A DNA stretch of 64,000 bases from Selaginella moellendorffii. Lineage: Eukaryota > Plantae > Lycopodiophyta. A program made the position numbers and the translations under genes. The stretch covers positions 3,604,559 through 3,668,558 of the forward strand of contig NW_003314268.1 of assembly GCF_000143415.4 (NCBI RefSeq), in the 5' to 3' direction. This document shows positions 151-53,622 of this stretch, in pieces; position 1 is the first letter of the stretch; every line of letters begins with the position of its first letter. The notes beneath the pieces were generated by a model, which was not told where the DNA came from, ran no database searches, and saw only the letters and a program-made list of their open reading frames with translations.

Positions 151-3100
151 ATGGCTACCAGTACTCCACCTCGCTCTACATCCAGAACCACCCTAGCAAG
201 CACCATGGCCATCCCGGCTGGCAACTGGGATGCAGGATGGGAGAAGCTACTCCAGAAGTTCACGGGCGAGAACTTCACAACTTGGAAGACCAAAGTCCAA
301 TTAATCTTAATGGCAAAAGATTGTTGGGATTTGGTGGAGGGAACCGAAGTGAGACCTCCAGATACAGAAGCAGCCTTGCAGGCTACTTGGGACTCAAAGA
401 ACCACAAAGCCCTTTCCGTGATTGGACTGGGTCTTGGAGATGAATTTATTCATCTCCTTGATCTAGAAAAATCCGCCAAGGCCAATTGGGACTCCCTTTC
501 CCAAGTCTTTGCAGCCAAAGCCGCTAATGCTAAATTGGTTCTGACCCAGAAATTTTTCTCCCTACGCATGCAGCCTGGTGAGACAATGGCAACATACATC
601 GGGAAGCTCAAGGGCTTAATGCAGCAGCTGAAGGAAGTAGGTGCTGCAGTTTCCGATGACTATGCAAAAGCCTTCTTGCTGTACTCTGTATCCCCAGAGT
701 TGCAACAATCGTCCTCCATGCTTTCTTTTGTCCCAGGCAAAACCATGGAGGAGCTCTACTCTGATCTGCTCGAGGAAGAGCGCAAGATTGCCGAGCGTCA
801 AGCTGCCCATCAAGGATCCCCTCAGGCTGCTCGTGAGCAGGCCTTGTTTCTTGGTAAGAAACAATCGAGTGGGGAGCAGAAGAAAGGAGGCACTAGCCGT
901 GGGCCTCGTATCTCTTCTGCTATAACTCCCAGCTCTGGATCTAACTTCTCCAAGAAGAAAAAGGGTCCTTGCAACTATTGTGGAAAGATGGGGCATGTCG
1001 AGCGTGAGTGCCGTGCAAAGAAGGCTGCCACCCAGCGCATGCTTACCCAGAGCAACTCGTTGTTGATGATGGCTCTTTACCCATCACCGGTGTCTGCTCT
1101 TGAGGTTCTATGGTTGGATAGTGGTGCCTCCTTTCACATGACTCCCTTAAGGTTTGCCTTTCACACTTACAAAGCTCTTCAAGCTCCACAACAGGTTTAT
1201 GTCGGCGACAAGCGACCACTCCAGGTGGAAGGTCGTGGCATGGTGGTGATCAGGCTATCCGATGGACCTCTTAAGGAGGTTCATCACGTGTACTTTGTAC
1301 CTGAAGCAGGGCAGACAGTTCTTTCTATTGGTGCAGCCTCAGATCAAGGCTTTACTACCACCTTCTTCCCAAAAGGGTGTACCATCCATGGTCGTGATGG
1401 TACTCCTGTAGCCAGTGGCGTGAGGTATGAAACACTCTACCGTTTAAACGCAGAACTGGTTTTTCCAGCTCAAGTGCTTGCTTTCCGAGCACAAGACACC
1501 ATTGAGCTCTGGCATGCTCGTTTGGGGCATGTCAATGAACGAGATCTGCATGCCTTAGCTCGTCACCAGCATGCTAAAGGCATCACGCTCCCAGCTGGCC
1601 ATCTGGGCGTGTGTGAAACTTGCTATCTTGGGAAGCAAGTTCGCCTTCCTTTTCCATCGAGAACCATGGAGGACCAAGCTACAGGCTTACTGGATCTGGT
1701 TCACAGTGACGTGTGCTACCTGCCCGTGGAAACACTCAGCCGCAAGAGGTACTTTGTATCTTTTATCGATGACCATTCCAGATATGCTGTGGTGAGCCTT
1801 CTCCACGCCAAGAGCGAAGTGTTCAACCACTTTAAGTTTTTTAAGAGCTGGGCAGAGACGTCTACTGGTCGAAAGATTCGTGTGTTACGCACAGATGGTG
1901 GTGGAGAGTACTTGAACAGAGAGTTTCTCAACTTTCTAGCTGAGGCTGGCATCGTTCATCAGTACACGACAGCCTATACTCCTCAACAGAACGGTGTGGC
2001 AGAGCGCCTCAATCGCACTCTGCTAGAGACTGTTCGTTGCCTTCTCCAGCACGCAGGCATACCCAACTCCTTTTGGGGTGAAGCTATTAACACGGCTGTT
2101 TACATCCGTAACCGCCTTCCCACAAGGAGCACTGGTGTGGTTCCTTATCACGCTTGGACTGGGAAGCGTCCTCAGTTAGGGCACTTGAGGGTCTTCGGCT
2201 GTACAGCGTATGCTCGCATTCCAGATGCGATTCGGCAAAAGCTGGATCCTAGGAGCCAGAAGACCATCTTCGTGGGCTATCATGCTCATTCCAAGGCCTA
2301 CCGCCTCTATAATCTTGCTCTCAAGAAGCTCGTGGTCAGCCGAGATGTCTCTTTCAATGAGCAAGAGCTTTATCGCCACATTCAAGGTACTATTCCTTCC
2401 AGTTCTAACTTGGTGGACTTGACCCCAGTGCTGGAAGACGAGCTCACCCACCCACCAGCACCAGCAGTCCAGAGGCTGCTTGTCCCAGAAGGAGGAACAC
2501 CTCCTCCACTTGGTGATGAGCCTTCTCCAGCAACTCCGCTGCTACCAGCTCCTCTGGTCACTTCGGTGGCTACTAGCAGCAACACTACTTCATCCAGTGA
2601 GCAGAATCTTGCTGCTACTGTGGATGAGCTGTTTGTTGGTGAAGAAACAGTTGGAGGATCTTCCCACTCACCTCCAGATTCTTTCATGACACCACCACCT
2701 CGTCAAGAGATTGGAGCTGTTACCCGTTCAGGACGAGTGAGCAAGCCAACGGTCAAAGCTCTAGAATCTCTTGCTCAAGCTCCACGCAAGAAGGGATTCT
2801 ATTGGGCCATGAGCTCCATTGCTGAACCTCGTGGCTACCAGGCTGCCCTCTCCAGTCCTGATGCCTCACACTGGCAAGCGGCCATGCAGGACGAGTATGA
2901 CTCACTGATCAAGAATGGAACCTGGACATTGGTTCCCCTCCCTCCTGGCAGGAAGGCAGTCACAGCCAAGTGGCTGTTCAAGAAGAAATATCGAGCTGAT
3001 GGCAGCATTGAGCGCTACAAGGCACGATTTGTAGCTCGTGGTTTCTCTCAGATCCAGGGAGTTGATTACTCTGAAACTTATAGCCCTGTTGTAAAGCTGA

Positions 3101-4422
3101 CAACAATTCGTGTTTTGATGAGCCTTGCAGCTGAGCTCGACCTGGAGCTCCATCAACTTGATGTGAGAACTGCATTCCTGAACGGTGATCTTGAGGAGGA
3201 GGTGTACGTTGCCCAGCCTCCTGGGTTTATACGTCCCGGACAGGAGCATCTCGTCTGCCGCTTGCACAAGGCTCTCTACGGGCTGAAACAAAGCCCCAGG
3301 TCATGGTACACTAAAATTAACAGCTTTCTAACCTCGTTGGGCTTTACTCGCAGCACGGCTGATAATAATCTCTACATATATCGAGATGGCCAAGGATTTT
3401 TATTCTTAGCCTTATATGTGGACGATACAATATTAGCCTCCAATCAGATGCGACTCATCCACCGCATCAAGGCCTCTCTCGCTGCTAAATTCGAGATGAC
3501 CGATCTGGGAACCTTGCACTACTGTCTGGGAATTCAAGTTTGCCGGGATAGGCAACATGGAGTACTTGAGCTCTCACAGGAGAAATACATCCATGACATT
3601 CTCCAGAGGTACTCCATGCTTAACGCTAATCCAGTGGCTACTCCTATGGAAGCAGGCTCAAAGTTGTCCAAGGCTTGTAGTTTGACATCAACCTCTGATG
3701 ACACTCCCGAGGAGGAGACCACAACACTGTACCGTTCAGTGGTCGGGAGCCTCATCTACTTGATGGTCTCAACTAGGCCTGACCTTGCATTCAGTGTGGG
3801 AGCAGTCTCAAAGTTCCTGGACAATCCATCACCCTCACATTGGGCTGCTGTGAAGCGGATCATGAGGTATGTGAGTGGCACAAGGAAGTTCACACTGAGA
3901 TATGCAAGAGGAGATGGAGACAACGGCCTGGTGGGATTCACAGACGCAGACTGGGCAGGAGATCCAGATGACAGAAGATCCACCTCAGGGTATGTCTTCA
4001 TGTACAACCATAACGTGGTTAGTTGGTGTTCCAGGAGGCAGCAGATCACTGCGATGTCATCATGCGAATCTGAATACATCGCAGCTGCAGCAGCAGCGAA
4101 AGAGGCCATCTGGCTTAAGACGTTGCTGCAGGACCTCGGGATTCAAATTCCAGCAGTCAAACTCTACTGCGACAATATGTCGGCAATAGCGTTGACTCGG
4201 GATGCGAGATTTCACTCACGCACCAAGCACATTGAGTTGAGGTTCCATTTCATCCGGGATCAAGTCAACAATGGAACAATCAACCTGGAATTCTGTCCGA
4301 CCAGCTCAATGGTCGCTGATATCCTAACGAAGTCCTTGCCTCGAGTGAAGCATGAACTCTTCCTCAAATCATTCCGTTTGACTGACGGTGCGAGCCTTGA
4401 GGAGGAGTGTGGAGACAAGTGA
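151..4422 (+). CDS. Ty1/copia gag-pol polyprotein (intact, 1423 aa)
   Basis: CCHC knuckle CNYCGKMGHVEREC, protease WLDSGAS, WHARLGH, integrase (RTDGGGEY, PQQNGVAER), RT LYVDD and RNase H in copia order. The stop codon lies inside the 3' LTR. Confidence 0.97.
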   Translation: MATSTPPRSTSRTTLASTMAIPAGNWDAGWEKLLQKFTGENFTTWKTKVQLILMAKDCWDLVEGTEVRPPDTEAALQATWDSKNHKALSVIGLGLGDEFIHLLDLEKSAKANWDSLSQVFAAKAANAKLVLTQKFFSLRMQPGETMATYIGKLKGLMQQLKEVGAAVSDDYAKAFLLYSVSPELQQSSSMLSFVPGKTMEELYSDLLEEERKIAERQAAHQGSPQAAREQALFLGKKQSSGEQKKGGTSRGPRISSAITPSSGSNFSKKKKGPCNYCGKMGHVERECRAKKAATQRMLTQSNSLLMMALYPSPVSALEVLWLDSGASFHMTPLRFAFHTYKALQAPQQVYVGDKRPLQVEGRGMVVIRLSDGPLKEVHHVYFVPEAGQTVLSIGAASDQGFTTTFFPKGCTIHGRDGTPVASGVRYETLYRLNAELVFPAQVLAFRAQDTIELWHARLGHVNERDLHALARHQHAKGITLPAGHLGVCETCYLGKQVRLPFPSRTMEDQATGLLDLVHSDVCYLPVETLSRKRYFVSFIDDHSRYAVVSLLHAKSEVFNHFKFFKSWAETSTGRKIRVLRTDGGGEYLNREFLNFLAEAGIVHQYTTAYTPQQNGVAERLNRTLLETVRCLLQHAGIPNSFWGEAINTAVYIRNRLPTRSTGVVPYHAWTGKRPQLGHLRVFGCTAYARIPDAIRQKLDPRSQKTIFVGYHAHSKAYRLYNLALKKLVVSRDVSFNEQELYRHIQGTIPSSSNLVDLTPVLEDELTHPPAPAVQRLLVPEGGTPPPLGDEPSPATPLLPAPLVTSVATSSNTTSSSEQNLAATVDELFVGEETVGGSSHSPPDSFMTPPPRQEIGAVTRSGRVSKPTVKALESLAQAPRKKGFYWAMSSIAEPRGYQAALSSPDASHWQAAMQDEYDSLIKNGTWTLVPLPPGRKAVTAKWLFKKKYRADGSIERYKARFVARGFSQIQGVDYSETYSPVVKLTTIRVLMSLAAELDLELHQLDVRTAFLNGDLEEEVYVAQPPGFIRPGQEHLVCRLHKALYGLKQSPRSWYTKINSFLTSLGFTRSTADNNLYIYRDGQGFLFLALYVDDTILASNQMRLIHRIKASLAAKFEMTDLGTLHYCLGIQVCRDRQHGVLELSQEKYIHDILQRYSMLNANPVATPMEAGSKLSKACSLTSTSDDTPEEETTTLYRSVVGSLIYLMVSTRPDLAFSVGAVSKFLDNPSPSHWAAVKRIMRYVSGTRKFTLRYARGDGDNGLVGFTDADWAGDPDDRRSTSGYVFMYNHNVVSWCSRRQQITAMSSCESEYIAAAAAAKEAIWLKTLLQDLGIQIPAVKLYCDNMSAIALTRDARFHSRTKHIELRFHFIRDQVNNGTINLEFCPTSSMVADILTKSLPRVKHELFLKSFRLTDGASLEEECGDK

Positions 4423-4571
4423 TGACAAGTCTCCACGTCAGCAAAGAAGACAAGTCATTCATCCAAGACACCAACCGCCAAGCGTCACACCCATACCGTT
4501 ATGTACATAACCATACCAAAGCAATGAAGTCGACAGAGCATTCCGCATACACAAAAAATCACACATCTACA
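4408..4571 (+). repeat. Putative 3' LTR (164 bp) of the copia element
   Basis: TG...CA ends, PPT upstream, host sequence downstream. The second LTR is not visible for confirmation. Confidence 0.75.
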
Positions 4572-4637
4572 GTATCTGTCCGGAACGCTGTCCAGCGTCC
4601 CGTTGCAGCTGTCAACAAATGCCTTGATGCCAGCCAT
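4572..4637 (-). pseudogene. 2OGD copy A: first 22 codons, disrupted by copia
   Basis: Reverse complement of 8045-8110 (MAGIKAFVDSCNGTLDSVPDRY). Confidence 0.9.
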
Positions 4638-5060
4638 GGATGAAACTGTGTAAGCAAGAAAGCTTCAAAGATGAAAAATGGAAATGTAAGGCTTTCTCAA
4701 CTTTGAGATGCGGATATCCGTGTCCCCCCAGTGCCCTGCTTATATAGTTGCAATTTTCAAGTGGGCAGCACGAAGATGCTAAGAACGTTACCATTGCGCC
4801 GAATTCGGATCCGCCCCCGCTCAAGACCATTTTGTGGACCTTTCCGTATCCGTGATCTGACCAGCGTCCACATGCGGCCTGCCTCGGATCCACATCAAGC
4901 GTCAAAGCTCAACTTAGTTGACCCACCGGAAAAATCCATGAACCTTCGCAATTGTCACGTTTTCTAGTGTGCTTTGAGAAACGAAAAGATCGTCCACGCA
5001 AGCGACGGCTGCATTCGGGGCGTCACATGGACTGCAATACGAACAAGCATAAGAAACGAT
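4572..5060. repeat. Inverted repeat arm pairing with 7622-8110
   Basis: Near-identical reverse complement. Mirror ORFs 4612..4905/7777..8070 and 4731..4967/7715..7951 differ by one residue in total. Confidence 0.95.
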
Positions 5061-5415
5061 CAACTCCGAAGCATCCAGACACCACGAGAGTCTGTCGATC
5101 AACTTGAAAGCATCCAGACACCACCGCCAACTGACAAGTCTGAAACTCAGCTCGCGGATATGAATTGCACCCGTAGTGCTCTGCAAGTCGTCGACATTCT
5201 CCTTCTCAAGCTTCCAGCGCTTGCAGCTACAGATGGTTCCAAGTTCCGGTGAGAGGGAAGGACTACAGGCTCGTCCAGCATCGACACGTGGCTCATGGTG
5301 ATCGCAACTTCCTGCGGCCTGGGAACCGTGTCTACCTTCTACAGCAACTTGGGCCAGCTGAGCGACTCCACCGCGAGGATGAACATCTTCGTGGCTCTCC
5401 TCAACATCTGGGACT
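5058..5415 (+). pseudogene. Nodulin-like/NFD4-family MFS pseudogene, middle part
   Basis: PVRGKDY followed, after a frameshift, by SIDTWLMVIATSCGLGTVSTFYSNLGQL...IFVALLNIWD. Matches the family pattern RGEDY...SIDxWL...NLGQ...IWNF. Confidence 0.8.
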
Positions 5416-6129
5416 GGTAAGGTGTGAGTACAAAGCGACCGCAGATAGCTGGGAGCACTATGTGTTTAACGCCCTCCCTGCAAGCAAATGAAACAACGCC
5501 CCTGTAATAGCAAAAGCACAATGTATCAAGTGTGCTACACACTCCGGCATACCTGTAACTTTATCAAAGTGCTTAGCAGCGTTGGAGCATTTTGGGCCTC
5601 GAGAAGGTGAAAAGCGAATAAGAAAAAGAACCTCATTAAATATTTCTGAAAAGGAAAACAGAAAAGATTTCTTTTTCTTATTCGTTGGCACATTACAAGC
5701 TCGTTTGCGGATTGAAAGTGTACAATGGACACAAGTGCATCAATCCGAGTGGTGAAAGCGCTTGTATAGGTAAACTGCTTGGTAAAGCGAACTTGGACGG
5801 GTCAGCCTCTCGTCCTTCGCATATTAACACATACCCAGCACTCTGATGTTCCCACCAGATCCTGCAACTCGTCATTCATCCTGCAAAAGAACCACCGATG
5901 TTTCTAAAAAGTACGCTGTACATATCTTACTTTGAGAATGCGAGCTCCAGAGCTCTCGGTGTACCACTGCTCGAATGCGATCCATGAGTCGAGATCGGCA
6001 TAACTTGAGAATTTCGAGTTGTGGTGCACATCTGTTACCTTTGGAAGAGCTGCATGGAAAATTACTACAACTCGCCTCCATCTTCACTGCTGGTGTGCAC
6101 CTGGAAATCTCTCAAACATTAGGAATTTG

Positions 6130-6969
6130 ATGTGGATGTGGGAGTACGATTGTCTGGAGCGCGGGTGGAGCGATCGCGCGTGGGCAATGCAGTGCCCAAC
6201 ACCAGCGAGGGTTCAAGATTATATGAGCAGGTTCGTGGATCTTCCCGAGGAGCAGCGGCAATGGGCGGAGAGTGTCTACTCGAATGGGGAAGGATTGGAG
6301 CTTTTTCTTTTCCAGGTGAACGCCATCGAAGGCGAGGGCTTTGAGTTGTATAAAGAGACCCAGGAGGCGATTGCCGCAGGCGCGCTGCTGGATGGCTCTC
6401 AAGATATGAGCCAAGAGGCTGAAGCCATGCGTTGCCTCCACAGGGCATTTGCACATCAGCTCCAAGGAAGCAATCCAAACTTGGCACCGAGGTTGAGCGT
6501 TTCTGGCATTCTGGATGCGCACAGGTGCCTGATGACCTCGAGCAAGCCAGACATCGCCGGGAGGCTGAGGCGCGAGGACGAGATTGCCTTCACCATGACG
6601 ACACTGAACTTGCCGCATGTTTTCATGTGGCCTTCGGACGTGGAGGGAGCTCTTCACAGGCTCGTGGATGAAACCAATGCGGAGCTAGAGGAGCTCTTCG
6701 CGAGAGATTGTCACGACCGGACTGAGAGACTTCTCAAGCTCGGGGCACGGTTCTTCCTCGAGTTTGAGAACATCCATCCTTTCAAGGATGGGAATGGGAG
6801 GATCGGGAGAGTACTGCTCGCAAAGCTATTGCAGTCACTTGCGCCGTTCCCGAATACCTTGTTGGTGGAAAGTATGAAGCAGGACCCTCCGTTTGTGGAC
6901 GGGGATGACTACCGGGAATGCTTCGAAAAGAGCACGAGTTCGATCGTAGCGAGGAAGGTGGCGCGCTGA
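6130..6969 (+). CDS. Fic/DOC-domain protein (class II-like), possibly C-terminally truncated
   Basis: Canonical HPFKDGNGRIGR, upstream VNAIEG inhibitory-like motif, ILDAHRCLM...AGRLR. No intron apparent. First in-frame ATG at 6130. Confidence 0.85.
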   Translation: MWMWEYDCLERGWSDRAWAMQCPTPARVQDYMSRFVDLPEEQRQWAESVYSNGEGLELFLFQVNAIEGEGFELYKETQEAIAAGALLDGSQDMSQEAEAMRCLHRAFAHQLQGSNPNLAPRLSVSGILDAHRCLMTSSKPDIAGRLRREDEIAFTMTTLNLPHVFMWPSDVEGALHRLVDETNAELEELFARDCHDRTERLLKLGARFFLEFENIHPFKDGNGRIGRVLLAKLLQSLAPFPNTLLVESMKQDPPFVDGDDYRECFEKSTSSIVARKVAR

Positions 6970-7068
6970 CACAGAGCATGAAAAGAGCTTGGATCGATCG
7001 TATGATCTTTACCGAGATCAGAGAAGACATGGCCATCTGAGACGACGTTGTAGTGCATGTAGGAATTA

Positions 7069-7601
7069 CTCGTGGTGTCTGGATGCTTCGGAGTTGATCG
7101 ACAACACCAGCACCGTTCGAATGTGATCGAAGCTCAGCTTGGACAACCAGAACAACCACAAGTAGTACGATGACCAACATCGAGGCTGGAAGCCTGCTCG
7201 GTATGCTCCCCTCAATGACTGTGACGACGATGAGATAGGCCCTTAAGGCAAAGGTGGGGTAGAGGAACGAGCTGAGAATGGACTTGTCGCTGGACTTCTC
7301 GACGACAGGCCCAGGCCCGAGGAAGAGGCCAAGCAGTAGATACAGGAACGTTGGTAGAAGCCCAAGGAGGAGCTGACATGGAACTGGAAAAAAGTCTGGA
7401 ACACAACCGCGAATGGCCAGGAAAGCCATGCTGGTACCGAGATGATGTTATTGACGGACTCTTGCCTGTAACACAGGGAGATTTTGAGCTGAAGCTGGTG
7501 AGCGTGCCTCCGGTGCATGCTATCAGGTAGAAGCCCGACACTGCGATGACCCAGCGATTGCTGGCGATGGAGAAGAGCTCCCTCGCCATTGCTAGAGCCA
7601 T
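7069..7601 (-). pseudogene. Nodulin-like/NFD4 MFS N-terminal fragment (copy B)
   Basis: MARELFSIASNRWVIAVSGFYLIACTGG, LKISLCYRQ; frameshifted. Confidence 0.75.
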
Positions 7602-8044
7602 TGCCGACTTCGCAGGTAATAATCGTTTCTTATGCTTGTTCGTATTGCAGTCCATGTGACGCCCCGAATGCAGCCGTCGCTTGCGTGGACGATCTTTTCG
7701 TTTCTCAAAGCACACTAGAAAACGTGACAATTGCGAAGGTTCGTGGATTTTTCCGGTGGGTCAACTAAGTTGAGCTTTGACGCTTGATGTGGATCCGAGG
7801 CAGGCCGCATGTGGACGCTGGTCAGATCACGGATACGGAAAGGTCCACAAAATGGTCTTGAGCGGGGGCGGATCCGAATTCGGCGCAATGGTAACGTTCT
7901 TAGCATCTTCGTGCTGCCCACTTGAAAATTGCAACTATATAAGCAGGGCACTGGGGGGACACGGATATCCGCATCTCAAAGTTGAGAAAGCCTTACATTT
8001 CCATTTTTCATCTTTGAAGCTTTCTTGCTTACACAGTTTCATCC

Positions 8045-9224
8045 ATGGCTGGCATCAAGGCATTTGTTGACAGCTGCAACGGGACGCTGGACAGCGTTCC
8101 GGACAGATACATGATGCCGAATGGAGCTGCCGATGTCTCCCGGTACGCGGTGCTGCCGATAGTCGATCTGGCGAGCAAGAGCTTCGAGAGGGATCTCGTT
8201 GACGCTTGCGCAAAGTACGGAATGTTCTACGTAAGTTTTCAAGAAGTGTCTTTTTCCTGTAGTACATGTTTGCTAAATGGATGTACTTCTTGTTCAGCTC
8301 AAGAACCACGGCATTCACACCGAGGACGTGATGAGGTGTGCTCTCGAGTTCTTCAACTCGCCCAGCGAGGACAAGATGCGGTACTACACCGAGGAGATCT
8401 TCACGCCCGTCCGCTACTGCACCAGCATGATGCCTTCGAAGGAAGAGAAGCTCGAGTGGCACGACCACCTCCAGATGTGGCTCAAGGAAGAGTCCCTCGG
8501 AGCGCACCCCTGGCCCGCGTTCCCAGCCAGCTACAAGTCAGTATCTCACTCCGTGATTATGGTATTGCTCTAGATTGCTGATGCTCTATATGCAACAGGG
8601 ACGTTGGATCCGAGTACGCCAGAAACATCTTCAAGCTCGGGAAGAGGATGCTGTTGGTCATGTCTGAGGGACTTGGCCTCCGCACAAACCGTCTTCTGGA
8701 AGCATTTGAAGACATGGTTCTTCTGACGAGAGCCAACTTCTATCCGGCTTGCCCGAATCCGAGGCAAGCCTTGGGGATGGAAGGTCACACCGACAGTGGT
8801 GGCCTCACGTTTGTGCTCCAGGATGGAGTCGGGGGATTGCAGCTCAAGCAAGGCGAGGATTGGTACAATGTGAGGCCACTCGAGGGAATGCTGGTGGTTA
8901 ACATGGGCGATCAGCTAGAGGTACCAGCAGTCGAAAACTTTTTGAGAAACTGTGGATTGATCTTAGTCTTGGTTGGTTGTCTTGTATCAGAAGCTGAGCA
9001 ATGGGAGATACAAGAGCATACTGCACAGGGTGATGGTGAACTCGAAGAGCTCGAGGCTGTCCGTTGGGGCGTTCCTGGGGCCGTCACTAGATGCGGAGAT
9101 CAGCCCGATTCCAGAGCTGGTGAGCCAGGAGAGTCCGGCAAAGTACCGCAGCAGGACTTACAGGGACTACATGCACGAGGTGTACACGGAGCACTTCTCC
9201 GGGAAGAATGTCTATGTGGCTTGA
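8045..9224 (+). CDS. 2-oxoglutarate/Fe(II)-dependent dioxygenase (DOXC type), copy B; exons 8045-8230, 8298-8536, 8599-8920, 8991-9224 (326 aa)
   Basis: GT-AG introns give an open frame. NHGI, NFYPACP, HTD...H iron triad and RLS 2OG-binding motif. Confidence 0.93.
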
Positions 9225-9755
9225 GCCTTGGATAGTCATAGGCACCAATTTTTTTCCTCATCTCACAGATTTTTGCTCACAAGGATCTTAATGTGATAAG
9301 CCACATACGAAATTTGCTCCCTTGACCGACTGTGTGCTGCCTAGAAGGTCGTAAAAGCTTAACAATCACACTTTGTGCTGCCTAGAAGGTCGTAAAGTTT
9401 AACAATCTGCGAAGGAATAAGAGAAATTTTCGTTAACGGGTGTCTTATTATATAAATAATTTATAGCTGAATTTTTGTAACGTTCAGGTGTCCACTCTTT
9501 TTATTTTCATTGGCTTTAGATTGTTAGCTGTGTCAAGTCCAGTGAAAACCACACCGGCAATCAACTAGAACTTCGATAGAAAATTAAGTGTGCTGGGCGG
9601 GAACGTGAGCGTGGGAATGGAGGGAGAGAGAAGACTTCCACAACAAACTTGCAAACTTGTTTGCTCAGTCTCATGCTTTTTGTTGGGCACTCCAAAACAG
9701 AATATAGAATAAAATAGATTATCCAAAGGAAACCTGAAATATACCACATACAAGA

Positions 9756-10150
9756 TCCTGGGAGCAGTCGGCTGCGGCTTCGTAGGAGTATCTCGGAGGT
9801 GTCCGAGATACTCCTCAGAAGTTTGGCATTGGACGGCCGTTCGTCTTCGCTGCTGTGGTTGGCTCTCTAGCGCTCGGCAACTTGCTCATCGCCTTGGGCC
9901 TTCCCGGTGCGTTGTACATCGGCTCCATCATCATACATCGCAAAGGGGATTGGGACGTTCGTCCTGTCGGTGGAAGTTGGGGGTGTGTTCTACGATCGGC
10001 AAGCCAGGAGATATCGGGGCCCTGACACGCTGGAGACCGGGCTCTTGTGCCACGGTGCCAAGTGCTACAGCGAAACCTTCTTCGTCATGGCCGCCACCTG
10101 TTTGTTTGGGTGCGCCATTGCCGGAGGCGAGGCCCAGGTTGATGAGAAAA
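9756..10150 (+). pseudogene. Nodulin-like/NFD4 MFS pseudogene, C-terminal part
   Basis: FLGAVGCGF..SEILLR, FGIGRPFVF..LLIALGLPGALYIGSII, VGGVFYDRQA..CHGAKCYSETFFVMAATCLFG. Joins in frame to 5415. Confidence 0.82.
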
Positions 10151-10522
10151 GTTGCTGCTGCTGACGATGCTAGCAGAGCTCTCATCTTCCAATTTTTTTT
10201 TTTGGTTCCAAGCTATACAAGAACCAAAGACTTGAAATTAGCACCCAGAACCAAAGAAAAACAAGAGTAGAATAGGATGAATGCGTTTTAGAAATAGAGA
10301 ACTCGCCGGAGGGCGACCAAATGCTTTATTTCTCATTCCACTGGAGGGCCGTGCATTTCAATCGGAGGGAAGAATGCTATCATCCAGCGCCAGAGCGCTT
10401 GGGATCGGTCGATCTATAATGCAGGATCACCAGAGCCGTGCCTTTAAACCTGATGATCGCCACAAGCCCTTTTAGGGCTTTTTTGCCCTTTTGATTTAGT
10501 TTCCTAATCTAATCTAATCTAA

Positions 10523-37044: not shown

Positions 37045-37218
37045 TGTGAGTGCATGGAATATGGAAAGGGAATACAGAAATGTGCATATCAATTAACCCA
37101 AAAACCCTAGCTTATATACAGGAGCGAGTGGTCCGGATTGAAACCAATCCGACGGCTACCAAAATCCACTACGCTAATATTAGTATATGGCATCGTAGCC
37201 GTACACTTGGCCCTCACA
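37045..37218 (-). repeat. Gypsy 3' LTR
   Basis: TGTGAG...CTCACA; 6 substitutions versus 41931-42104. Confidence 0.96.
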
Positions 37219-37250
37219 TCATCCCCTCCTCTCGGAATAATGGAAGGCCG

Positions 37251-40200
37251 TTAGGGTTCTCTTGTAGATAGGCCGGGATCTGGAGGAACGTCAGGAGGAG
37301 GCATCGGCGGATCTGTAGACGGTATTAACTGCTCCTGATCCCTTTGTATGAAGCGTTTTAACCGCTGCACATGCACAATCTCCGGAGGATCGGTTTGCTG
37401 AACGTCATGCCGAACCTCATAAACTTGCAGTCCAACTTGCCGCAACACTCGATACGGTCCTTTCCACTGCGCAAGGAGCCCCTTAGATAAACCACGTACC
37501 GTAAGATGGGGAAAACGAACTAACACCAAATCATTCACTTTGTACTCCACAGGTGGACGATGATGGGAGTTGTAGCGCCGTTGTTGTCCCACTTGTACGC
37601 GGCCTAAGTGTTCGGCAGACTCTGCTCGGACAAGTGGAAGAATGCTTGTCAAATACTAATCCCATGACCTAGCATCAGGAGCTCGTGGCAATCGCGAAGG
37701 TAAACCCAACTCTGTTGGTAATATTGGATCATGACCATATAGAAGTTTATATGGTGAAGCACCAATAGAACTTTGCACCCCTGTGACATAGGCATATCGA
37801 AGAGACGGCAAATAACCATCCCAATCCGAATGCTGGAAGTTCACATACTTCGAAATCATCCCTTTGAATGTCCGAACGAGCCGTTCCACCAGACCGTCTG
37901 ATTGTGGATGATAAGCACTCGTAAAAGTGTGGCGTATCCCCAACCGAGATGTCAAAACATGAAATACCTCAGCCATAAATGTAGGACCAGTATCCGAAAG
38001 AATCCGCTCTGGACAGGAATGCTGGAACACCACTCGATTGAGGAGGAAGTATCCAACAGCAGTTGCAGAGGCGCTAGCAAGTTCACCAACTTTCACCCAA
38101 CGAGTCAAGTAGTCAGAAGCAATAATAACATACTCATTGCCAGCAGTCGATCGTGGAAAAGGTCCCATAAGATCAAACGCCACAAACTCAAACGGACGGG
38201 AAACTGCAATTGACTCCAACCGTCCTTCCGCAGCACAAGGGGGAGTATTACGAGCTTGGCACCAAACGCAGCTACGCACATACCGGATAATATCACGTTG
38301 CATCTCCGGCCAATAGAAAGACCTGCGCAGCTTCTCGGTGACACGACGGTGTCCCATATGCCCACCTAGAACAGGAGAATCATGGTAGGCATGGAGAAAC
38401 CACGGAATAAACACCGAAGGTACCACCAGTCGTAAATGATCATCAAGATCCGTCCCCACAAAATAAAGAAGGCCATCTTCAAGGCGATATTGAGAATGTA
38501 AATGCCGGAAAAGCAAGTCATCAGCAAGTGATGCAGGATTCTCAAACCCATCTCGAAGCCTTCGAATCCACGGCTCAATCTTTTGAGCCTCGCGAACCTC
38601 CTCAAGAGAAGGCAGATCTTGCTCTGCACCCTGTGGACACTGAACGTCAAGGACAGCAACCGCCGACGGCACAGAATCCTCATCTAGAAAATCCACAGAT
38701 GCTGGAACAACAGGTTCGTCAGAATGATGAGAAGTGAGTGGAGAAGGAAGAGGAGCTCGAGAAAGGGCATCAGCATCAGCCATAGAACTCCCTGGGCGAT
38801 GAACAACATCGAAATCATATATCTGAAGCTTCAAAGCCCATCGAGCCGTACGACCAACCAGGTTCTTCCGCTTCAATAATGAAGTAACAGCAGCATGGTC
38901 ACCTTCAAGTAACGTCCGAGAACCATGTAGATATGCATGAAGTTTCTCAAAACCCCAGACTGCTGCTAAACACTCCTTCTCCGTCGTGGAGTAGTTCATC
39001 TCCGCTGGTTGTAATGTACGGCTTATGTATGCAATGGGATGGCGCTGACCAGGCACACTCGAGCTCTCTTGCATCAACACACCTCCAAGACCAATGTCAG
39101 AAGCATCCACGCACAAAATAAAAGGTCGAGTGTAGTCAGGATATGCCAAAACCGGAGGAGTCGTCAATAGCTCCTTGAGATCCACGAACGCCCGCTCACA
39201 ATCCGGAGACCAGATGAAAGATGACGTTGATGACTTCAGCAACGTTCGCAATGGTGTAGTGCGATCGGAAAGATGATCCACAAAACGACCAAAATACTAC
39301 ACCTTACCCAAAAAGCGCTGCACATCATTCACACACTTCGGAGTAGGGAACTTTAGAACAGCCACAAGTTTGTCAGGATCAACTTGCAAACCCTCACAAG
39401 AAATACGGTACCCAAGATAAGTTGTGTCCTTGGACCCAAACACGCACTTCGACCGCTTCAGCTTTAAACCAACGTCGCGTAGCCGATCCAACACTTTACA
39501 AACATCACGAACGTGCTCCTCCCACGTCCCCTCCGAGTGGATCAAAACATCATCAATGAGGTCAGCAATCACCTCCAGCATATCGCAAAGAACCTCGTCC
39601 ATCATCCGCTGGAAAGTTGCTGGAGCATTGTTCAAACCAAACGGCATCACCAAGAAGTCGTACAAACCAAATGGTGTACGAAAAGCAGTCTTAGGAATAT
39701 CTTCTTCGGCCATCGGTACTTGCCAATACCAAGAAGCAAGATCTAGCTTGGTGAACCAACGACTCCGTCCCAGACGATCCAAGAGATCAGCAGTGTGAGG
39801 AAGAGGATACATATCTGGGATCGTCACTTCATTTAACGGACGATAGTCGATGCAGAAACGAATACTCCCATCAAGCTTCGTCACAAGATGAGGTTCACAT
39901 GCCCAAGGACTCCGTGACTTCCGAATAACACCCTTTTCCAGCATTTCCTTGACGTTTGCTCGTAAAATTTTGATCTCCTTAGGTGACCGACGACGAACAG
40001 GAACCTTGATTGGACGAGCATCCCCGGTTGGAATTGGATGACGTGTGGCAATCTTGGCCCCAGACGATAGGTCAAATTCAAAGAGATCAGAATACTCCTT
40101 CATGAGCCGGTCAACTGCTACAACACAAAGATCGTCGTAGGGATCGGAAAAGGGAAAAACAGAACAAGATGAAAACACAGAAGGAAAGAGTGGGGAAACA

Positions 40201-41648: not shown

Positions 41649-41930
41649 AAGATGAACGAAAAAGAAAGAGCAAAAGAAGAGAAATGACAAAAAAGCTGGA
41701 AAGAAATGGTAGATCTAGACAATGCAAAAAGCTAAATCGAAACCAAAATCCTAAAAGGAAAGAACAAAAGAAAGGAAATGGAAAAAGCTAAATCTAGACG
41801 ATGCAAAAGCTAGATCTAAACCGAAATCCCAAAAAGCTAAATCTAGACGATGCAAAAGCTAGATCTAAACCGAAATCCCAAATCCAAACACTCCCCAGGG
41901 ACAATCAAAGGTGCCCCTCATCTCCACCAA

Positions 41931-44573: not shown

Positions 44574-44615
44574 CTATGGGAGATAGTTCTGATGGAGGTT
44601 GATGCTGCTGTTATG

Positions 44616-48705: not shown

Positions 48706-49491
48706 CTAATCTAGCACACACTCACTTGCCTGTAGTGGCTGGGCCTCCCATCTGGATACCTCACACGTCATCTCGAACGCGTCACGCTTGAGCAGCATCT
48801 CATGCTCGAGCTCCTCGCAAGCCAAATCTCCCACACCCCGGATGATCTTGAAGTGGAGCAACAAGAACTTGCCATCGGACAGCTCCACGATTACGTTATG
48901 CTGTCCGATGGCAAGTTCTTGTTGCGTCGGTATGTGGAAGTTCCTCTCCTCGGAGGAGCGCTGCACCGTCACGAGCGAGGAGTGGATCACGTTGATGCCG
49001 TAGTTTGGTTGGGATGCGGGTTTATGGAGACGCGGAGTTGCAGTGGAAAGAGCCACTCCACCATTGCCGAGTAGGCGCGATATGAGGAAGCCGACTTGGC
49101 TGCACAGCTTCTTCTTGGCCGACTTGGATGGGAGACTCTTGCAACTCTTGTGCTCGTAGAGATCCTCAAGCATGAACCTCGAGAAGCCGCGGTACAAATT
49201 GCGCGTCTCCGGGTCCTCCTTGATGTCCCTGTGCACGGCCGACTCGTCGCTTCCAAACAAGCGGATGAGAGCTCGTCTCGCGGTCTCGGCGTTCGAGGTG
49301 GGGTCAGTGGCGATGGGATGCTCCAGCTCGATGCCGGAAACGAGCTCCGCTATGCTCTCGTCGCTGTGGTGGTCCAGCAAGAATTCGTCTAGGCGGTAGA
49401 AGCTGACCAAGCCGGGATACAAATCGTGCGCCATCTCGCGAAGCATCTCTCCGAATGTATCCACGGTAGCATCGTCAGAGCCAACTGACAC
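48706..49491 (-). pseudogene. Dit1/PvcA (isocyanide synthase-like) fragment, fungal-type
   Basis: VGSDDATVDTFGEMLREM, LYRGFSRFMLEDL, KKLCSQVGF; AYSAMVEWLFPLQLRVSINPHPN in a shifted frame; YGI, HIPT...HNVIV. N-terminal half missing. Confidence 0.72.
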
Positions 49492-49596
49492 AGAGCTTTA
49501 CTCATGAAAACAAGGAGCTCCTTGCTATCGTGGATTCCTTTGGAGAGTGGCATCATTTTTTGGAGGGGGCGAGCCATTAAGTGCATGTAGGAATTA

Positions 49597-50160
49597 CTCG
49601 TGGTGTCTGGATGCTTCGGAGTTGATCGACAACACCAGCACCGTTCGAATGTGGTCGAAGCTCAGCTTGGACAACCAGAACAACCAGAAGTAGTACGATG
49701 AGCAGCATCAAACCAAAGAACACCAAAGGCACCGAGGCTGGAAGCCTGCTCGGTATGCTCCCCTCGATGACTGTGACGACAATGAGATAAGGCAAAGGTG
49801 GGGTAGAGGAACGAGCTGAGAATGTACTTGTCGCTGGACTTCTGGACGACAGGCCCGGGCCCGAGGAAGAGGCTAAACAGTAGATACAGGAACGTTGGTA
49901 GAAGCCCAAGGAGGAGTAGAAAGAAGCTGACGTGGAACTGGAAGAAAGTCTGGAACACAACCGCGAATGGCCAGGAAAGCCATGCTGGTACCGAGATCCT
50001 TGAAGAAGCACTCCTGCTTGTAACACAGGGAGATTTTGAGCTCCTAGCTGAAGCTGGTGAGCGTGCCTCCGGTGCATGCTATCAGGTAGAAGCCCGACAC
50101 TGCGATGACCCAGCGATTGCTGGCGATGGAGAAGAGCTCCCTCGCCATTGCTAGAGCCAT
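49597..50160 (-). pseudogene. Nodulin-like/NFD4 MFS N-terminal fragment (copy C)
   Basis: NRWVIAVSGFYLIACTGG, CFFKDLGTSMAFLA; premature stop. Confidence 0.78.
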
Positions 50161-50621
50161 TGCCAACTTCGCAGGTAATAATCGTTTCTTATGCCTTTGT
50201 CTTGTTCGTATTGCAGTCCATATGACGCCCTGACTGCAGCCGTCGCTTGCGTGGACGATCTTTTCGTTTCTCAAAGCACACTAGAAAACGTGACAATTGC
50301 GAAGGTTCGTGGATTTTTCTGGTGGGTCAACTAAGTTGAGCTTTGACGCTTGATGTGGATCCGAGGCAGGCCGCATGTGGACGCTGGTCAGACCACGGAT
50401 ACGGAAAAGTCCACAAAATGGTCTTCAGCGGGGGCGGATCCGGAATCGGCGCAATGGTAACGTTCTTAGCATCTTCGTGCTGCCCACTTGAAAATCTTAT
50501 TTTTTTTGCAACTATATAAGCAGGGCACTGGGAGGACACTGATATCCGCATCTCAAAGCCTAGCATCCAAGCATACATTTCGATTTCCATCTTTCAAGCT
50601 CTTGCTTACACAGTCCCATCC

Positions 50622-51802
50622 ATGGCTGGGATCAAGGCATTTGTTGACAGCTGCAACGGGACGCTAGACAGCGTTCCAGACAGATACATGATGCCAAATG
50701 AAGCTGCCGATGTCTCCCGGTACGCGGTGCTGCCGATAGTCGATGTGGCGAGCGAGAGCTTCGAGAGGGATCTCGTTGACGCTTGCTCAAAGTATGGAAT
50801 GTTCTACGTAAGTTTTCAAGAAGTGACTTTTTTCCTGTAGTACATGTTTGCTAAGTGGATGTATTTCTTGTTCAGCTCAAGAACCACGGCATTCACACCG
50901 AGGATGTGATGAGGTGCGCTCTCGATTTCTTCAACTCGCCCAGCGAGGACAAGATGCGGTACTACACCGAGGAGATCTTCACACCCGTCCGCTACTGCAC
51001 CAGCATGATGCCTTCGAAGGAAGAGAAGCTCGAGTGGCACGACCACCTCCAGATGTGGCTCAAGGAAGAGTCCCTCGGAGCGCACCCCTGGCCCGCGTTC
51101 CCAGCCAGCTACAAGTCAGTATCTCGCTCCTTGATTATGGTATTGCTCTAGATTGCTGACGCTCTATATGCAACAGGGACGTTGGATCCGAGTATGCCAG
51201 AAACATCTTCAAGCTCGGGAAGAGGATGCTGTTGGTCATGTCCGAGGGACTTGGCCTCCGCTCAAACCGTCTTCTGGAAGCATTCGAAGACATGGTTCTC
51301 CTGACGAGAGCCAACTTCTATCCGGCTTGCCCGAACCCGAGGCAGGCCTTGGGCATGGAAGGCCACACCGACAGCGGCGGCCTCACGTTTGTGCTCCAGG
51401 ATGGAGTCGGGGGATTGCAGCTCAAGCAAGGCGAGGATTGGTACAATGTGAGGCCACTCGAGGGAATGCTGGTGGTTAACATGGGCGATCAGCTAGAGGT
51501 ACGAGCAGTCGAAAACGTTTTGAGAAACTGTGGACTGATCTTTGTCTTGGTTGATTGTCTTGTATCAGAAGCTGAGCAATGGGAGATACAAGAGCATATT
51601 GCACAGGGTGATGGTGAACTCGAAGAGCTCGAGGCTGTCCGTTGGGGCGTTCCTGGGGCCATCACTAGATGCGGAGATAAGCCCGATTCCAGAGCTGGTG
51701 AGCCAGGAGAGTCCGGCAAAGTACCGCAGCAGGACTTACAGGGACTACATGCACGAGGTGTACACGGAGCACTTCTCCGGGAAGAATGTCTATGTGGCTT
51801 GA
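50622..51802 (+). CDS. 2OG-Fe(II) dioxygenase copy C (4 exons)
   Basis: Same exon structure and motifs as 8045-9224, with few amino-acid changes. Confidence 0.92.
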
Positions 51803-53622
51803 GCCTTAGATAGTCATGGGCACCAATTTTTTCTCATCTCACGATTTTTTTGCTCACAAGGATCGTAATGTGATAAGCATGTATGGATACATACGAAATT
51901 TGCTCCCTTGACCGACTGTGTGCTGCCTAGAAGGTCGTAAAAGCTTGACAATCAGACTATGTGCTGCCTAGAAGGTCGTAAAAGATTAACAATCCGACTG
52001 TTTGCTGCCTAGAAGGTCATAAAGTTTAACAATCTGGGAAGGAATAAGAGAAATTTTCGTTAACAGGTGTCTTATTATATAAATAGTTTATAGCTGAATT
52101 TTTGTAACGTGGTTCTAAGCGCCATATGACTGATGTTTTATGGATTGCAAGTACTATCCAAACACACATAAAGCAGCGCTTTTCCATCAGGTGTCCACTC
52201 TTTTTATTTTCATTTGCTTTAGATTTTTAGCTGTGTCACGTCCAGTGAAAACCACACCGACAATCAACTTGAACTTCGATCGAAAATTAAGAAAATTTTC
52301 CCTGTAGTTTTCAGCAAGAGCGTGGCGGGACAGGGACCTCAGAGTGGCATGGGGAGATGGAGAAACGTGAGCGTGGGAATGGACGGAGAGAGAAGACTTC
52401 CACAACAAACTTGCAAACTTGTTTGCACAGTCTCTCATGCTTTTTGTTGGGCACTGCCAGACTGCCAAAACAGAATATAAAATAGAATAGACTATCAAAA
52501 GGAAACTTGAAATATACCACGAACCCAGTACATACAAGAGGTAAGGTGTGAGTATGTAGCTGGGAGCACTATGTGCTTAATGCCCTCCCTGCAAGCAAAT
52601 GAAACAACGCCCCTGTAATAGCAAAAGCACAATGTATCAAGTTTGTTACACACTTTGGCATACCTGTAACTTTATCAATGAGGACAAATAAAATTTATAA
52701 TATTAGAAAATGTTATTCTGATTAATCTATGTTGTGTCAATGATATCTAAGTTATGACTTCACCTAGTTATTGCAATATTTCCTAATGGTTTTTAATATT
52801 TTTGAAAGATTTAATTATGTATAGAAATTGTTGTAAGGGTTAATTGTTATATTATACCTTTATACCAGTTAAGATTTGATTCATTCTAAATTTGATCAAA
52901 ATGCATATAAGAAAAAGAGAATTCCACCAATCTATTGCAGAAACAAGCCACATATATAATTTAATGTTGTTAACTAAAGTTTGTAATATTTTACTCATAT
53001 TGTGATAATAATAATTAAAAATTATTTGCTACAAGAACTTGTTTTAAATTTCATCACGTAACTTTTTGGTTTGCTTAAGTATGGGGAGTAAGATGGTAGT
53101 TAGAACATGTTTGGATATTCTGGGATATTCTACAATCTAATGGTTATTATTCATTTAGATTAATCTTTTTTTTCTAATTTATAAACATGCTTATAATTTA
53201 TAAACTTTCCTAAACACTTGTTAATATATTCTAGTTTATTCTTACACAATAAGATTATCCTTATATTTATAAATTATAAATTTCCATTTGATCAATTGGA
53301 TTAATAAATAGGTGTAACGCATTGCCACGTGGAAGGCACAGCAAATTATTTACATTGTATGAATTTTATTGTTGTCAATGTTTTAACTGTCGTATTTTTA
53401 CTGATGAACACTCCCTTTAAATTGAATGTATAACTCATCTTCAAAAACAGATTAAAAGAGAAAGAAAACTTGCAATTGCACGGCAACACAAATTTATGCA
53501 TATACTTCACATCTAGACATGAGCATTTTGACCCTAAATAATTACACATTAAATGTAAATGTAGAAAGACTGGGAGAATCCAATCTGGGGTTGTCTTGGA
53601 CTCAGGGATATCACCGCCCAAA

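What the first reader, a model, noticed from the sequence alone, without database searches (positions are those of the whole stretch)
5416..9755. 4.34-kb insert is circularly permuted relative to its sister copy: footprint of a circular DNA intermediate
Seen: removing 5416-9755 restores the NFD4-like frame exactly (ATC TGG GAC T|TC CTG GGA = IWDFLG), with no TSD or TIR. The insert begins GGTAAGGTGTGAGTA and ends CATACAAGA. These two ends are directly joined at 52539/52540 (CATACAAGA|GGTAAGGTGTGAGTA). So the order is B-X-A here and A-B at 49.6-52.7 kb. Inference: a circle, or one unit of a tandem array, carrying the 2OGD and Fic opened at A|B and integrated next to a related locus.
Basis: partly seen in the sequence, partly recalled or inferred. 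Interest (0 to 1): 0.78.

Follow-up and report, generated by a model that had tools for sequence, protein, structure and literature searches.

The report
Circularly permuted gene-cassette insertion in spikemoss
In the spikemoss Selaginella moellendorffii, a 4.3-kb DNA piece carrying two intact genes was pasted into a transporter pseudogene with its two halves swapped relative to a sister copy, which points to a ring-shaped or head-to-tail DNA intermediate, a route known from cattle and humans.

Summary
Window 5416-9755 (4340 bp) splits one Phe codon of an NFD4/nodulin-like transporter gene. Intact Selaginella paralogues read ...NIWDFLGAIGCGF... straight through this point. With its parts swapped (7052-9755 then 5416-5567), the insert aligns as a single block to 49580-52678, and its two ends abut at 52539|52540.

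There is no target-site duplication, no terminal or subterminal inverted repeat, no microhomology and no lost base. The GT/AG-like ends would splice to a TGA stop, so this is not an intron.

New here:
- The insert is a copy of the head-to-head 2OGD + NFD4-5' cassette, and it landed in the NFD4 gene of another cassette copy.
- The Fic segment (5568-7051) sits exactly between the two outer ends of the sister unit, and is bracketed by AGTGC.
- Both 2OGD copies are under purifying selection.

Best reading (about 0.5): an extrachromosomal circle, closed around the Fic piece, was cut once and end-joined into a break. A tandem-array or template-switch origin and a multi-step local rearrangement remain open. 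This is a new plant example of a known kind of event, not a new mechanism.

The parts
151..4422 (+). Ty1/copia-type gag-pol ORF (1423 aa). Only 149 bp follow its stop before the junction at 4571|4572, so no recognisable 3' LTR is present. Context only.
   Evidence: ORF with GAG/integrase/RT/RNase H-like sequence; no LTR-like repeat between 1-400 and 4423-4571
4572..5092 (+). Native 5' region of the interrupted NFD4-like gene, called a' in the report. It is the reverse complement of 7622-8110 (489 bp, 99.8%) plus 7069-7100 (32 bp, 100%), with a 521-bp internal deletion at an ATCG microhomology. Its left end holds the first 66 nt of a 2OGD CDS on the minus strand.
   Evidence: contiguity with 5093 onward matches P0131, which has the DQL.SIQT motif twice
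5093..5415 (+). Middle part and C-half exon of the NFD4-like gene up to ...NIWD + T. A pseudogene here, with frameshifts and an in-frame stop at about 5249.
5416..5567 (+). Segment B, the left end of the insert. It equals 52540-52678 of the sister copy (94% substitution identity, one 13-nt indel).
5568..7051 (+). Segment X, unique in the window. It holds an intact intronless Fic gene (ORF 6019/6130-6969, motif HPFKDGNGRIGR). It starts with AGTGC, as does segment A.
7052..7068 (+). 17 bp (AGTGCATGTAGGAATTA) that are not NFD4-like but are shared by both A copies (equal to 49580-49596).
7069..7601 (-). Decayed N-terminal half of an NFD4-like gene (residues 1 to about 287 of P0123/P0131, lacking residues 73-163). 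It is truncated at the same base in both A copies.
8045..9224 (+). Plant-type 2-oxoglutarate dioxygenase gene, four open exon segments (DIOX_N + 2OG-FeII_Oxy), head-to-head with the NFD4 fragment.
   Evidence: pN 0.008, pS 0.099 against the sister copy
9225..9755 (+). 3' flank of the 2OGD, forming the right end of the insert. It ends in CATACAAGA.
9756..10185 (+). Rest of the NFD4-like C-half (TC-LGAVGCGF... to the C-terminus).
9785..9801 (+). 17-nt insertion made of the reverse complement of the next 13 nt (9802-9814) plus GGTG. Together with a 1-nt deletion just after it, this breaks the NFD4 frame. A snap-back or hairpin-type repair scar, 29 bp from the right junction.
49580..52539 (+). Sister copy of segment A: 17 bp, NFD4 N-half on the minus strand (50142-49619), 2OGD on the plus strand (50622-51802), and the 3' flank.
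52540..52678 (+). Sister copy of segment B, directly continuous with A.
52524..52564 (.). Imperfect 12-bp inverted repeat (CCCAGTACATAC / GTATGTAgCTGGG) with the A|B point inside its 16-nt loop. Present only in the sister copy.
48706..49491 (-). Isocyanide synthase (DIT1_PvcA) relic abutting the sister copy. Context only.

Best explanation
This is an insertion-type gene duplication that passed through a circular (head-to-tail closed) DNA form and was fixed by ordinary end joining, not by a transposase.

Proposed steps:
1. The source was a roughly 3.1-kb unit like 49580-52678. That unit is a truncated copy of the Selaginella head-to-head cassette: the NFD4-like transporter 5' half on one strand, and a 2OG-dioxygenase plus its 3' flank on the other.
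2. Its two outer ends were joined into a ring, and a 1.48-kb fragment carrying a Fic gene was caught at the closure point. This gave a 4340-bp circle.
3. The circle was broken once, at the point equivalent to 52539|52540.
4. The linear molecule was ligated bluntly into a double-strand break inside a Phe codon of the NFD4-like gene of another cassette copy, 44 kb away.
5. The inserted copy and the target gene's own 5' region then formed inverted repeats, which have been homogenised (99.8%).

Shown:
- the exact permutation;
- the exact target-site restoration;
- the absence of transposon features;
- the position of X exactly between the unit's ends;
- the intactness and constraint of the 2OGD.

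Inferred:
- that the head-to-tail form was a free monomeric circle;
- the direction sister-like unit to insert;
- the capture of X at closure;
- the homogenisation.
For: - Single collinear alignment of the permuted insert to 49580-52678. The end words abut only at 52539|52540.
- The insertion interrupts a codon that is uninterrupted in five S. moellendorffii paralogues and in angiosperm NFD4-like proteins. So this copy is the recipient.
- All four ends are preserved to the base, with no microhomology, no target-site duplication and no inverted repeat. That fits one cut in a circle plus one cut in the target, joined by classical end joining.
- The homology to the sister copy stops at the same two points where X begins and ends (5567|5568 = 52678, 7051|7052 = 49580). 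X and A both start with AGTGC, a 5-mer whose frequency in the window is 6.6e-4 per site. X therefore fills the would-be closure of the unit.
- A and B show the same divergence from the sister copy (94-96% non-coding), so they were copied together.
- The test of Takahashi and Innan (PMC7188851) for the tandem-duplication false positive is passed. The permuted copy is flanked by the two halves of an exon, not by a further direct copy of A or B.
- The same signature is the accepted footprint of circular intermediates in human segmental duplications (PMC7450558; PMC7188851).
Against: - No circle has been observed. The final sequence is equally produced by other routes (see rivals).
- The closure is not a clean end-to-end join; it holds 1484 bp of foreign DNA whose source was not found. 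Only one close Fic relative is annotated (P0001), and it probably is the allele on the other haplotype.
- The target is a paralogue of a gene carried in the insert, and an inverted copy of part of A lies 330 bp upstream. Both facts hint at a local rearrangement rather than an arrival from 44 kb away.
- The 99.8% identity of 4572-5060 to inverted A, against about 95% between the two A copies, needs an added assumption of gene conversion.
- Whether the 17 bp at 7052-7068 belong to the sister locus or are filler is undecided.
- Assembly errors could not be checked with reads.
Confidence: 0.5

Rival explanations
1. The head-to-tail donor was not a free circle. A tandem array (or a looped or re-replicated donor) of the unit A-B(-X) served as template. 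Exactly one period, starting and ending at the same phase, was either copied into the break by replicative template switching (MMBIR/FoSTeS-type) or popped out and re-entered during one repair event.
For: - It gives the same permutation.
- Tandem amplification of these very gene families is reported by other agents of this scan for this genome: isocyanide synthase arrays, Fic arrays, and a 5x 2OGD+MFS cassette. These are unchecked leads.
- Chicote et al. (PMC7450558) favour a replicative interaction.
- The AGTGC at both borders of X fits microhomology-guided template switches.
- A snap-back templated 17-nt insertion 29 bp from the right junction shows error-prone synthesis-dependent repair at this site.
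Against: - No tandem copy of A, B or X exists in the 64-kb window.
- Copying exactly one period to the base, with no microhomology at either outer junction, is not what template switching usually leaves.
- The sister copy is a single unit flanked by unrelated DNA.
Confidence: 0.2
2. There was no insertion from elsewhere. A native cassette at this locus (inverted X, inverted B, inverted A, then the NFD4 middle and C-half) was reshuffled in steps. First, a tandem duplication of A-B-X created the X|A joint. Second, a small inversion with breaks at A|B and inside the Phe codon created both outer junctions. Third, a flip occurred by recombination between the resulting inverted A copies.
For: - 4572-5092 is the native 5' region of the interrupted gene, and it is an inverted, 99.8%-identical copy of part of A.
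- An inversion with two clean breaks gives exactly the pair of junctions seen, with no base lost. Worked through on paper, this path reproduces the observed order.
- All partners lie within 5 kb.
- X would be single-copy or local, which fits the lack of another close Fic copy.
Against: - It needs three events, and it still passes through a head-to-tail (tandem) stage.
- It does not explain why the sister copy's two outer ends coincide with both ends of X.
- It predicts the remainder of the 2OGD, inverted B and inverted Fic just upstream of the copia element. That region is outside the window. No Fic note exists there in the scan's records, which is weak evidence.
- The copia element lacks a recognisable 3' LTR at the junction, so 4571|4572 looks like a rearrangement joint rather than a simple insertion.
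Confidence: 0.15
3. The insert is a non-autonomous rolling-circle transposon (Helitron, Helentron or Helitron2-like) that captured the genes. The sister junction is an end-to-start joint of two tandem elements.
For: - No target-site duplication.
- Insertion between T and T, the preferred Helentron target (PMC4067079).
- Joined ends are what rolling-circle intermediates produce.
- On the minus strand the element starts with TC.
Against: - No 3' CTRR end, and no 3' hairpin at the insert ends.
- No subterminal inverted repeat of 8 bp or more.
- No run of T at the ends, and no Rep/helicase ORF.
- Only these copies in 64 kb.
- In the sister copy the homology does not extend as two elements would require: X is absent on both sides.
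Confidence: 0.03
4. The junctions are an assembly artefact caused by the near-identical inverted repeats and paralogous cassettes.
For: - A 489-bp inverted repeat at 99.8% identity and two cassette copies lie in one window.
- No reads were available to check.
Against: - The two A-B copies differ by about 5% plus many indels, so they cannot have been confused.
- The outer junctions lie in unique sequence, inside a conserved codon, with base-exact complementarity to the sister junction.
- A gene model from the independent v1 assembly (P0001, on the scaffold that also holds the 97%-identical PPR gene) covers 5725-6741 of X.
Confidence: 0.05
5. The insert is a spliceosomal intron (an intron gain, or an 'introner') because it begins G|GTAAGG and ends ACAAG|A.
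For: GTAAG one base from the left end and AG one base from the right end.
Against: - Splicing at GT 5417 / AG 9754 leaves two bases and creates TGA.
- The base-exact restoration needs removal of 5416-9755, which has GG..GA ends.
- The same GTAAGG sits in plain 3'-flank DNA of the sister copy.
- The piece holds two complete genes with their own introns.
- The host gene is a pseudogene with several other frameshifts.
Confidence: 0.01

Closest known systems
Duplication or translocation through circular DNA intermediates. Examples: cattle colour-sidedness KIT translocations (Durkin et al. 2012, recalled from memory; the alleles are described in PMC12235870); human eccDNA-mediated duplications (Takahashi and Innan 2020, PMC7188851); human segmental duplications with A-B to B-A order (Chicote et al. 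2020, PMC7450558).
   Same: - The copy is circularly permuted relative to the donor-type order.
- Junctions show no long homology and no transposon features.
- The recipient site is otherwise unchanged.
- Genes are carried along intact.
   Different: - It is far smaller (4.3 kb against tens to hundreds of kb).
- It is in a lycophyte.
- The closure point holds an extra 1.5-kb gene-bearing fragment rather than a clean join.
- The target is a paralogue of a gene carried by the insert.
- All four outer ends are preserved to the base.
Filler-DNA or ectopic-sequence capture at double-strand breaks in plants (end-joining repair). Stated from general knowledge of plant DSB repair.
   Same: No target duplication, blunt or microhomology junctions, a nearby templated snap-back insertion, and insertion of genomic DNA from elsewhere.
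   Different: Ordinary filler is tens to hundreds of bp and collinear with its source. Here it is 4.3 kb and permuted, which needs a head-to-tail template.
Helitron/Helentron rolling-circle transposons
   Same: No target-site duplication, T|T target, gene capture, and joined ends in intermediates.
   Different: None of the terminal signatures (CTRR, 3' hairpin, subTIRs, T runs). No family of copies and no Rep/Hel.

Membership tests
eccDNA / circular-intermediate-mediated duplication | Block order A-B in one copy and B-A in the other, with the ends of the permuted copy contiguous in the other copy | tested here: met
   One blastn alignment of permuted 7052-9755+5416-5567 to 49580-52678. The ends abut at 52539|52540.
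eccDNA / circular-intermediate-mediated duplication | The permuted copy is an insertion: its flanks are contiguous at an empty site | tested here: met
   Paralogous empty sites only. P0131, P0123, P0122, P0127 and P0128 read N(I/L)WDFLGAIGCGF across the point. The true allelic empty site could not be fetched.
eccDNA / circular-intermediate-mediated duplication | A closure junction inside the permuted copy that joins the two outer ends of the donor segment | tested here: inconclusive
   The donor-type ends (5567 and 7052) face each other but are separated by the 1484-bp Fic segment, bracketed by AGTGC. It could be capture at closure, a larger donor, or a later insertion.
eccDNA / circular-intermediate-mediated duplication | Not the tandem-duplication-plus-deletion false positive (no second direct copy of a block flanking the permuted copy; PMC7188851) | tested here: met
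   The self-comparison shows no direct second copy of A or B next to the insert. Only an inverted 0.5-kb piece of A lies upstream.
eccDNA / circular-intermediate-mediated duplication | Physical existence of the circle | not testable with these tools
   Needs Circle-seq, outward PCR or long reads.
Helitron / Helentron | 5' TC and 3' CTRR termini with a 3' subterminal hairpin (canonical), or 12-15 bp subterminal inverted repeats plus a 3' palindrome and T runs (Helentron; PMC4067079) | tested here: not met
   The ends are GGTAAGG.../...ACAAGA (minus strand TCTTG.../...CTTACC). There is no inverted repeat of 8 bp or more between the end regions, and the ends fold no better than shuffles.
Helitron / Helentron | Insertion between A|T or T|T without target duplication | tested here: met
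   The flanks are T (5415) and T (9756), with no duplication. A single case carries little weight.
Spliceosomal intron / introner | GT..AG boundaries whose removal restores the reading frame | tested here: not met
   GT 5417 and AG 9754 leave G+A and give TGA.
TIR or LTR transposon | Terminal inverted or long terminal repeats and a target-site duplication | tested here: not met
NFD4 / nodulin-like MFS transporter (host gene) | Homology to Nodulin-like + MFS proteins along the whole length, with an open frame | tested here: not met
   Homology is clear: 89% to P0123 over the exon, and the family carries PF06813/PF23262/PF07690. The frame is broken by stops, frameshifts, a 521-bp deletion and the insert. 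It is a pseudogene of that family.

The most novel reading that the evidence does not exclude
The head-to-head 2OGD/transporter cassette, with passengers such as Fic, spreads in Selaginella as a transposase-free mobile unit through recurrent extrachromosomal circles. These circles open at a preferred structure: the A|B point lies in the loop of a 12-bp inverted repeat in the sister copy. On this reading, circle-mediated copying, rather than unequal crossing-over, would be a main engine behind the amplified specialised-metabolism gene families of this genome (isocyanide synthases, Fic, 2OGD+MFS cassettes).
Probability: 0.07. Interest if true: 0.75.

Novelty: new member of a known kind. Interest (0 to 1): 0.45.

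Why it matters
Circularly permuted duplicates are the main sequence footprint of gene movement through circular DNA. They are documented for large segments in cattle and humans. A small, base-exact example that carries two intact genes, one shown to be under purifying selection, would show that this route also makes functional gene duplicates in an early-diverging land plant.

It would also offer a testable explanation for how the amplified 2OGD/transporter, Fic and isocyanide-synthase families of Selaginella multiply. The clean junctions and the known empty-site sequence make it directly testable by PCR, long reads and Circle-seq.

Tried and rejected
- **Intron or introner reading: rejected.** GT/AG are each one base inside the insert, and splicing gives TGA. 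An earlier remark of mine that it would be in frame was an indexing slip, corrected in note 2.
- **Helitron/Helentron: rejected.** No termini, hairpin or subTIRs.
- **Retrocopy: rejected.** The 2OGD introns are retained and there is no poly(A).
- **LTR or TIR element: rejected**.
- **Site-specific recombination: rejected.** The two recombining points share no core: GGGACT|TCCTGG against ACAAGA|GGTAAG.
- **The 36-bp 'duplication' at 5057-5128 as a repair scar: rejected.** I first read it as showing that 4572-5092 was a foreign A fragment. The intact paralogue P0131 has the same two-fold DQL.SIQT repeat, so 4572-5092 is the native 5' region.
- **The 521-bp gap in 4572-5092 as an intron: rejected.** It is a deletion at ATCG, with no GT-AG.
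- **A purely conservative two-inversion history: rejected as sufficient.** It reproduces the local order, but it cannot yield the sister copy, which combines the 17-bp/truncated A start with A-B contiguity.
- **Exact look-ups of window ORFs: nothing found**.


Full report
**What genome this is.** Protein hits name Selaginella moellendorffii: SELMODRAFT_417825 and the XP_0245... proteins. Earlier scan notes say the same. A PPR gene of the window is 97% identical to a protein on a 1,749,879-bp scaffold of the public assembly, and that scaffold also holds the closest Fic relative P0001. The window is therefore the other haplotype, or another assembly, of that region.

**The observation.**
- The insert is 5416-9755, 4340 bp, between T 5415 and T 9756.
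- It starts GGTAAGGTGTGAGTA and ends CATACAAGA. These words abut at 52539|52540, and the 15-mer occurs nowhere else in the window.
- A self-comparison shows 7052-9483, 9484-9747 and 5446-5567 matching 49580-52110, 52187-52520 and 52557-52678.
- When the insert is permuted, one alignment runs through the join: 7052..9755|5416..5567 = 49580..52678.
- Substitution identity is 92-99% per segment, and A and B are equally diverged.

**That it is an insertion.** A search of the left exon against 1.8 billion representatives found intact S. moellendorffii NFD4/nodulin-like proteins.
- A follow-up search gave further paralogues and angiosperm NFD4-like proteins carrying Nodulin-like and MFS domains.
- All read straight through the site: ALLNIWDFLGAIGCGF in P0131, ALLNLWDFLG in four others, and SIWN(F/Y)(F/L)GR in angiosperms.
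- Removal of exactly 5416-9755 rebuilds the TTC Phe codon.
- The intron-like look of the ends misleads. GT is at 5417 and AG at 9753-9754, and splicing there gives GAC TGA.
- There is no target duplication and no microhomology at either outer junction.
- No inverted repeat of 8 bp or more links the ends of the insert, of the A-B unit or of X. The insert ends form no hairpin.

**What the insert is.** A tblastn search with P0123 and P0131 shows what segment A carries.
- On its minus strand (7601 to 7076) lies the decayed N-terminal half of an NFD4-like gene.
- This is head-to-head with a plant-type 2OG dioxygenase on the plus strand (8045-9224; DIOX_N and 2OG-FeII_Oxy).
- The sister copy has the same arrangement, the same internal loss (residues 73-163) and the same truncation point, followed by the same 17 non-NFD4 bases.

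So A-B is a discrete, already truncated copy of a 2OGD/transporter cassette. Another agent of this scan reports this cassette as amplified five-fold elsewhere in the genome (note s1-422229). That is a lead; I confirmed only the head-to-head arrangement here.

The 2OGD is open in both copies, with pN 0.008 and pS 0.099. Both copies have therefore been kept by selection. Segment X (5568-7051) is unique in the window and holds an intact intronless Fic gene with the HPFKDGNGRIGR motif.

**The target.** The interrupted gene is itself the transporter member of another cassette copy.
- 4572-5092 is its native 5' region, contiguous with 5093-5415 exactly as in P0131, which has the DQL.SIQT motif twice.
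- It is the inverted counterpart of A: 489 bp at 99.8% plus 32 bp at 100%. It has a 521-bp deletion at an ATCG microhomology.
- To the left it ends at 4571|4572 against a copia element that lacks a recognisable 3' LTR.
- The gene is a pseudogene. It has stops and frameshifts in the middle part.
- It also carries a 17-nt insertion at 9785-9801 made of the reverse complement of the next 13 bases plus GGTG, and a 1-nt deletion. That insertion is a snap-back or hairpin-type repair scar 29 bp from the right junction.

**A second clue to a head-to-tail form.** Homology to the sister copy ends at 5567 (= 52678) and begins at 7052 (= 49580). X therefore fills exactly the gap between the two outer ends of the sister unit. 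X and A both begin with AGTGC, a 5-mer present at 6.6e-4 per site. This is what one expects if the unit's right end once faced its left end, and X was caught or inserted there.

**Mechanism.** Any history that also explains the sister copy needs a stage in which the unit was joined head to tail. The sister copy combines the truncated, 17-bp-tagged A start with A-B contiguity.

The simplest such history has three steps:
1. A sister-like unit closed into a ring around the Fic fragment.
2. The ring was cut once.
3. It was ligated without loss into a break in the Phe codon by classical end joining.

The near-identity of inverted A and the native 5' region would then be later homogenisation between inverted repeats 2.5 kb apart. 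I give this 0.5.

The rivals are as follows.
- **Tandem-array or template-switch origin (0.2).** It gives the same product without a free circle.
- **Local three-step route (0.15).** A tandem duplication of a native A-B-X, an inversion with breaks at A|B and in the codon, then a flip between the inverted A copies. It reproduces the local order and uses only nearby DNA. It does not explain why the sister unit ends at both borders of X.
- **Rolling-circle transposon.** Not supported beyond the T|T target.
- **Intron.** Excluded.
- **Misassembly.** Unlikely, given 5% divergence between the copies, unique-sequence junctions, and an independent gene model over X. It was not tested with reads.

**Weak observations.** In the sister copy the A|B point lies in the loop of an imperfect 12-bp inverted repeat (52524-52535 / 52552-52564; fold z = -2.0). 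This could mark a preferred opening site. However, the arms are not intact at the insert's ends, where an 11-bp and a 13-bp indel lie 9 and 15 bp from the junctions. The sister unit's right end abuts an 880-bp block of 25% GC.

**Comparison with what is known.** The A-B to B-A signature with featureless junctions is the published footprint of circular intermediates in human duplications (PMC7188851, PMC7450558). It is also the footprint of the cattle KIT translocations, which I recall from memory (Durkin et al. 2012); the alleles are described in PMC12235870.

The criterion of Takahashi and Innan against tandem-duplication false positives is met. My two literature searches on this turned up no plant case of a permuted, reintegrated gene duplicate, but that is not an exhaustive search. 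I class the finding as a new member of a known kind.

**Limits.**
- Spliced models (2OGD, NFD4) were searched exon by exon only; the joined step was left out.
- The direction of copying, the source of X and the physical nature of the intermediate remain inferences.

Noticed in passing
window 9785-9814: A 17-nt insertion (GGAGTATCTCGGA + GGTG) that is the reverse complement of the 13 nt following it. It forms a perfect 13-bp palindrome with a 4-nt spacer inside the NFD4-like exon, 29 bp from the insert. It looks like a snap-back templated or hairpin-type break-repair scar, or a transposon excision footprint.
   Followed up: partly
window 52679-53560: An 880-bp block of 25% GC (window mean 48%) starts exactly where homology between the two cassette copies ends. 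Its origin is unknown, and no ORF or repeat hit was seen.
   Followed up: no
window 52524-52564: An imperfect 12-bp inverted repeat brackets the A|B point of the sister copy, with the point in its 16-nt loop. It is absent from the insert's ends.
   Followed up: partly
window 48706-49491 (minus) and 49492-49596: An isocyanide synthase (DIT1_PvcA) relic lacking its N-terminal part is fused, about 100 bp away, to the truncated NFD4 fragment of the sister cassette. This looks like a deletion joint inside an older ICS-transporter-dioxygenase neighbourhood. An intact ICS gene lies about 5 kb upstream of the window according to an earlier scan note.
   Followed up: partly
window 151-4571: A copia-type element has an intact 1423-aa gag-pol ORF, but only 149 bp follow the stop before the junction with the cassette. 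No LTR-like repeat is found within the window.
   Followed up: partly
window 5725-6741 vs P0001 (SELMODRAFT_417825): The public gene model of the allelic or closest Fic copy stitches together three frames and omits the catalytic HPFKDGNGRIGR region, which is intact in the window's single ORF. The Fic gene is probably mis-annotated in the public assembly.
   Followed up: partly
window 37045-47225: Several diverged inverted and direct repeat pairs (for example 40102-40907 vs 46442-45643 at 71%, and 37045-37218 vs 41931-42104 at 97%) with long ORFs. Probably nested transposable elements.
   Followed up: no
window 8045-9224 and 50622-51802: The two 2OGD copies differ at 6 of 313 compared codons (pN/pS about 0.08). 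The copy riding in the insert has stayed functional, while both linked transporter fragments decayed.
   Followed up: yes
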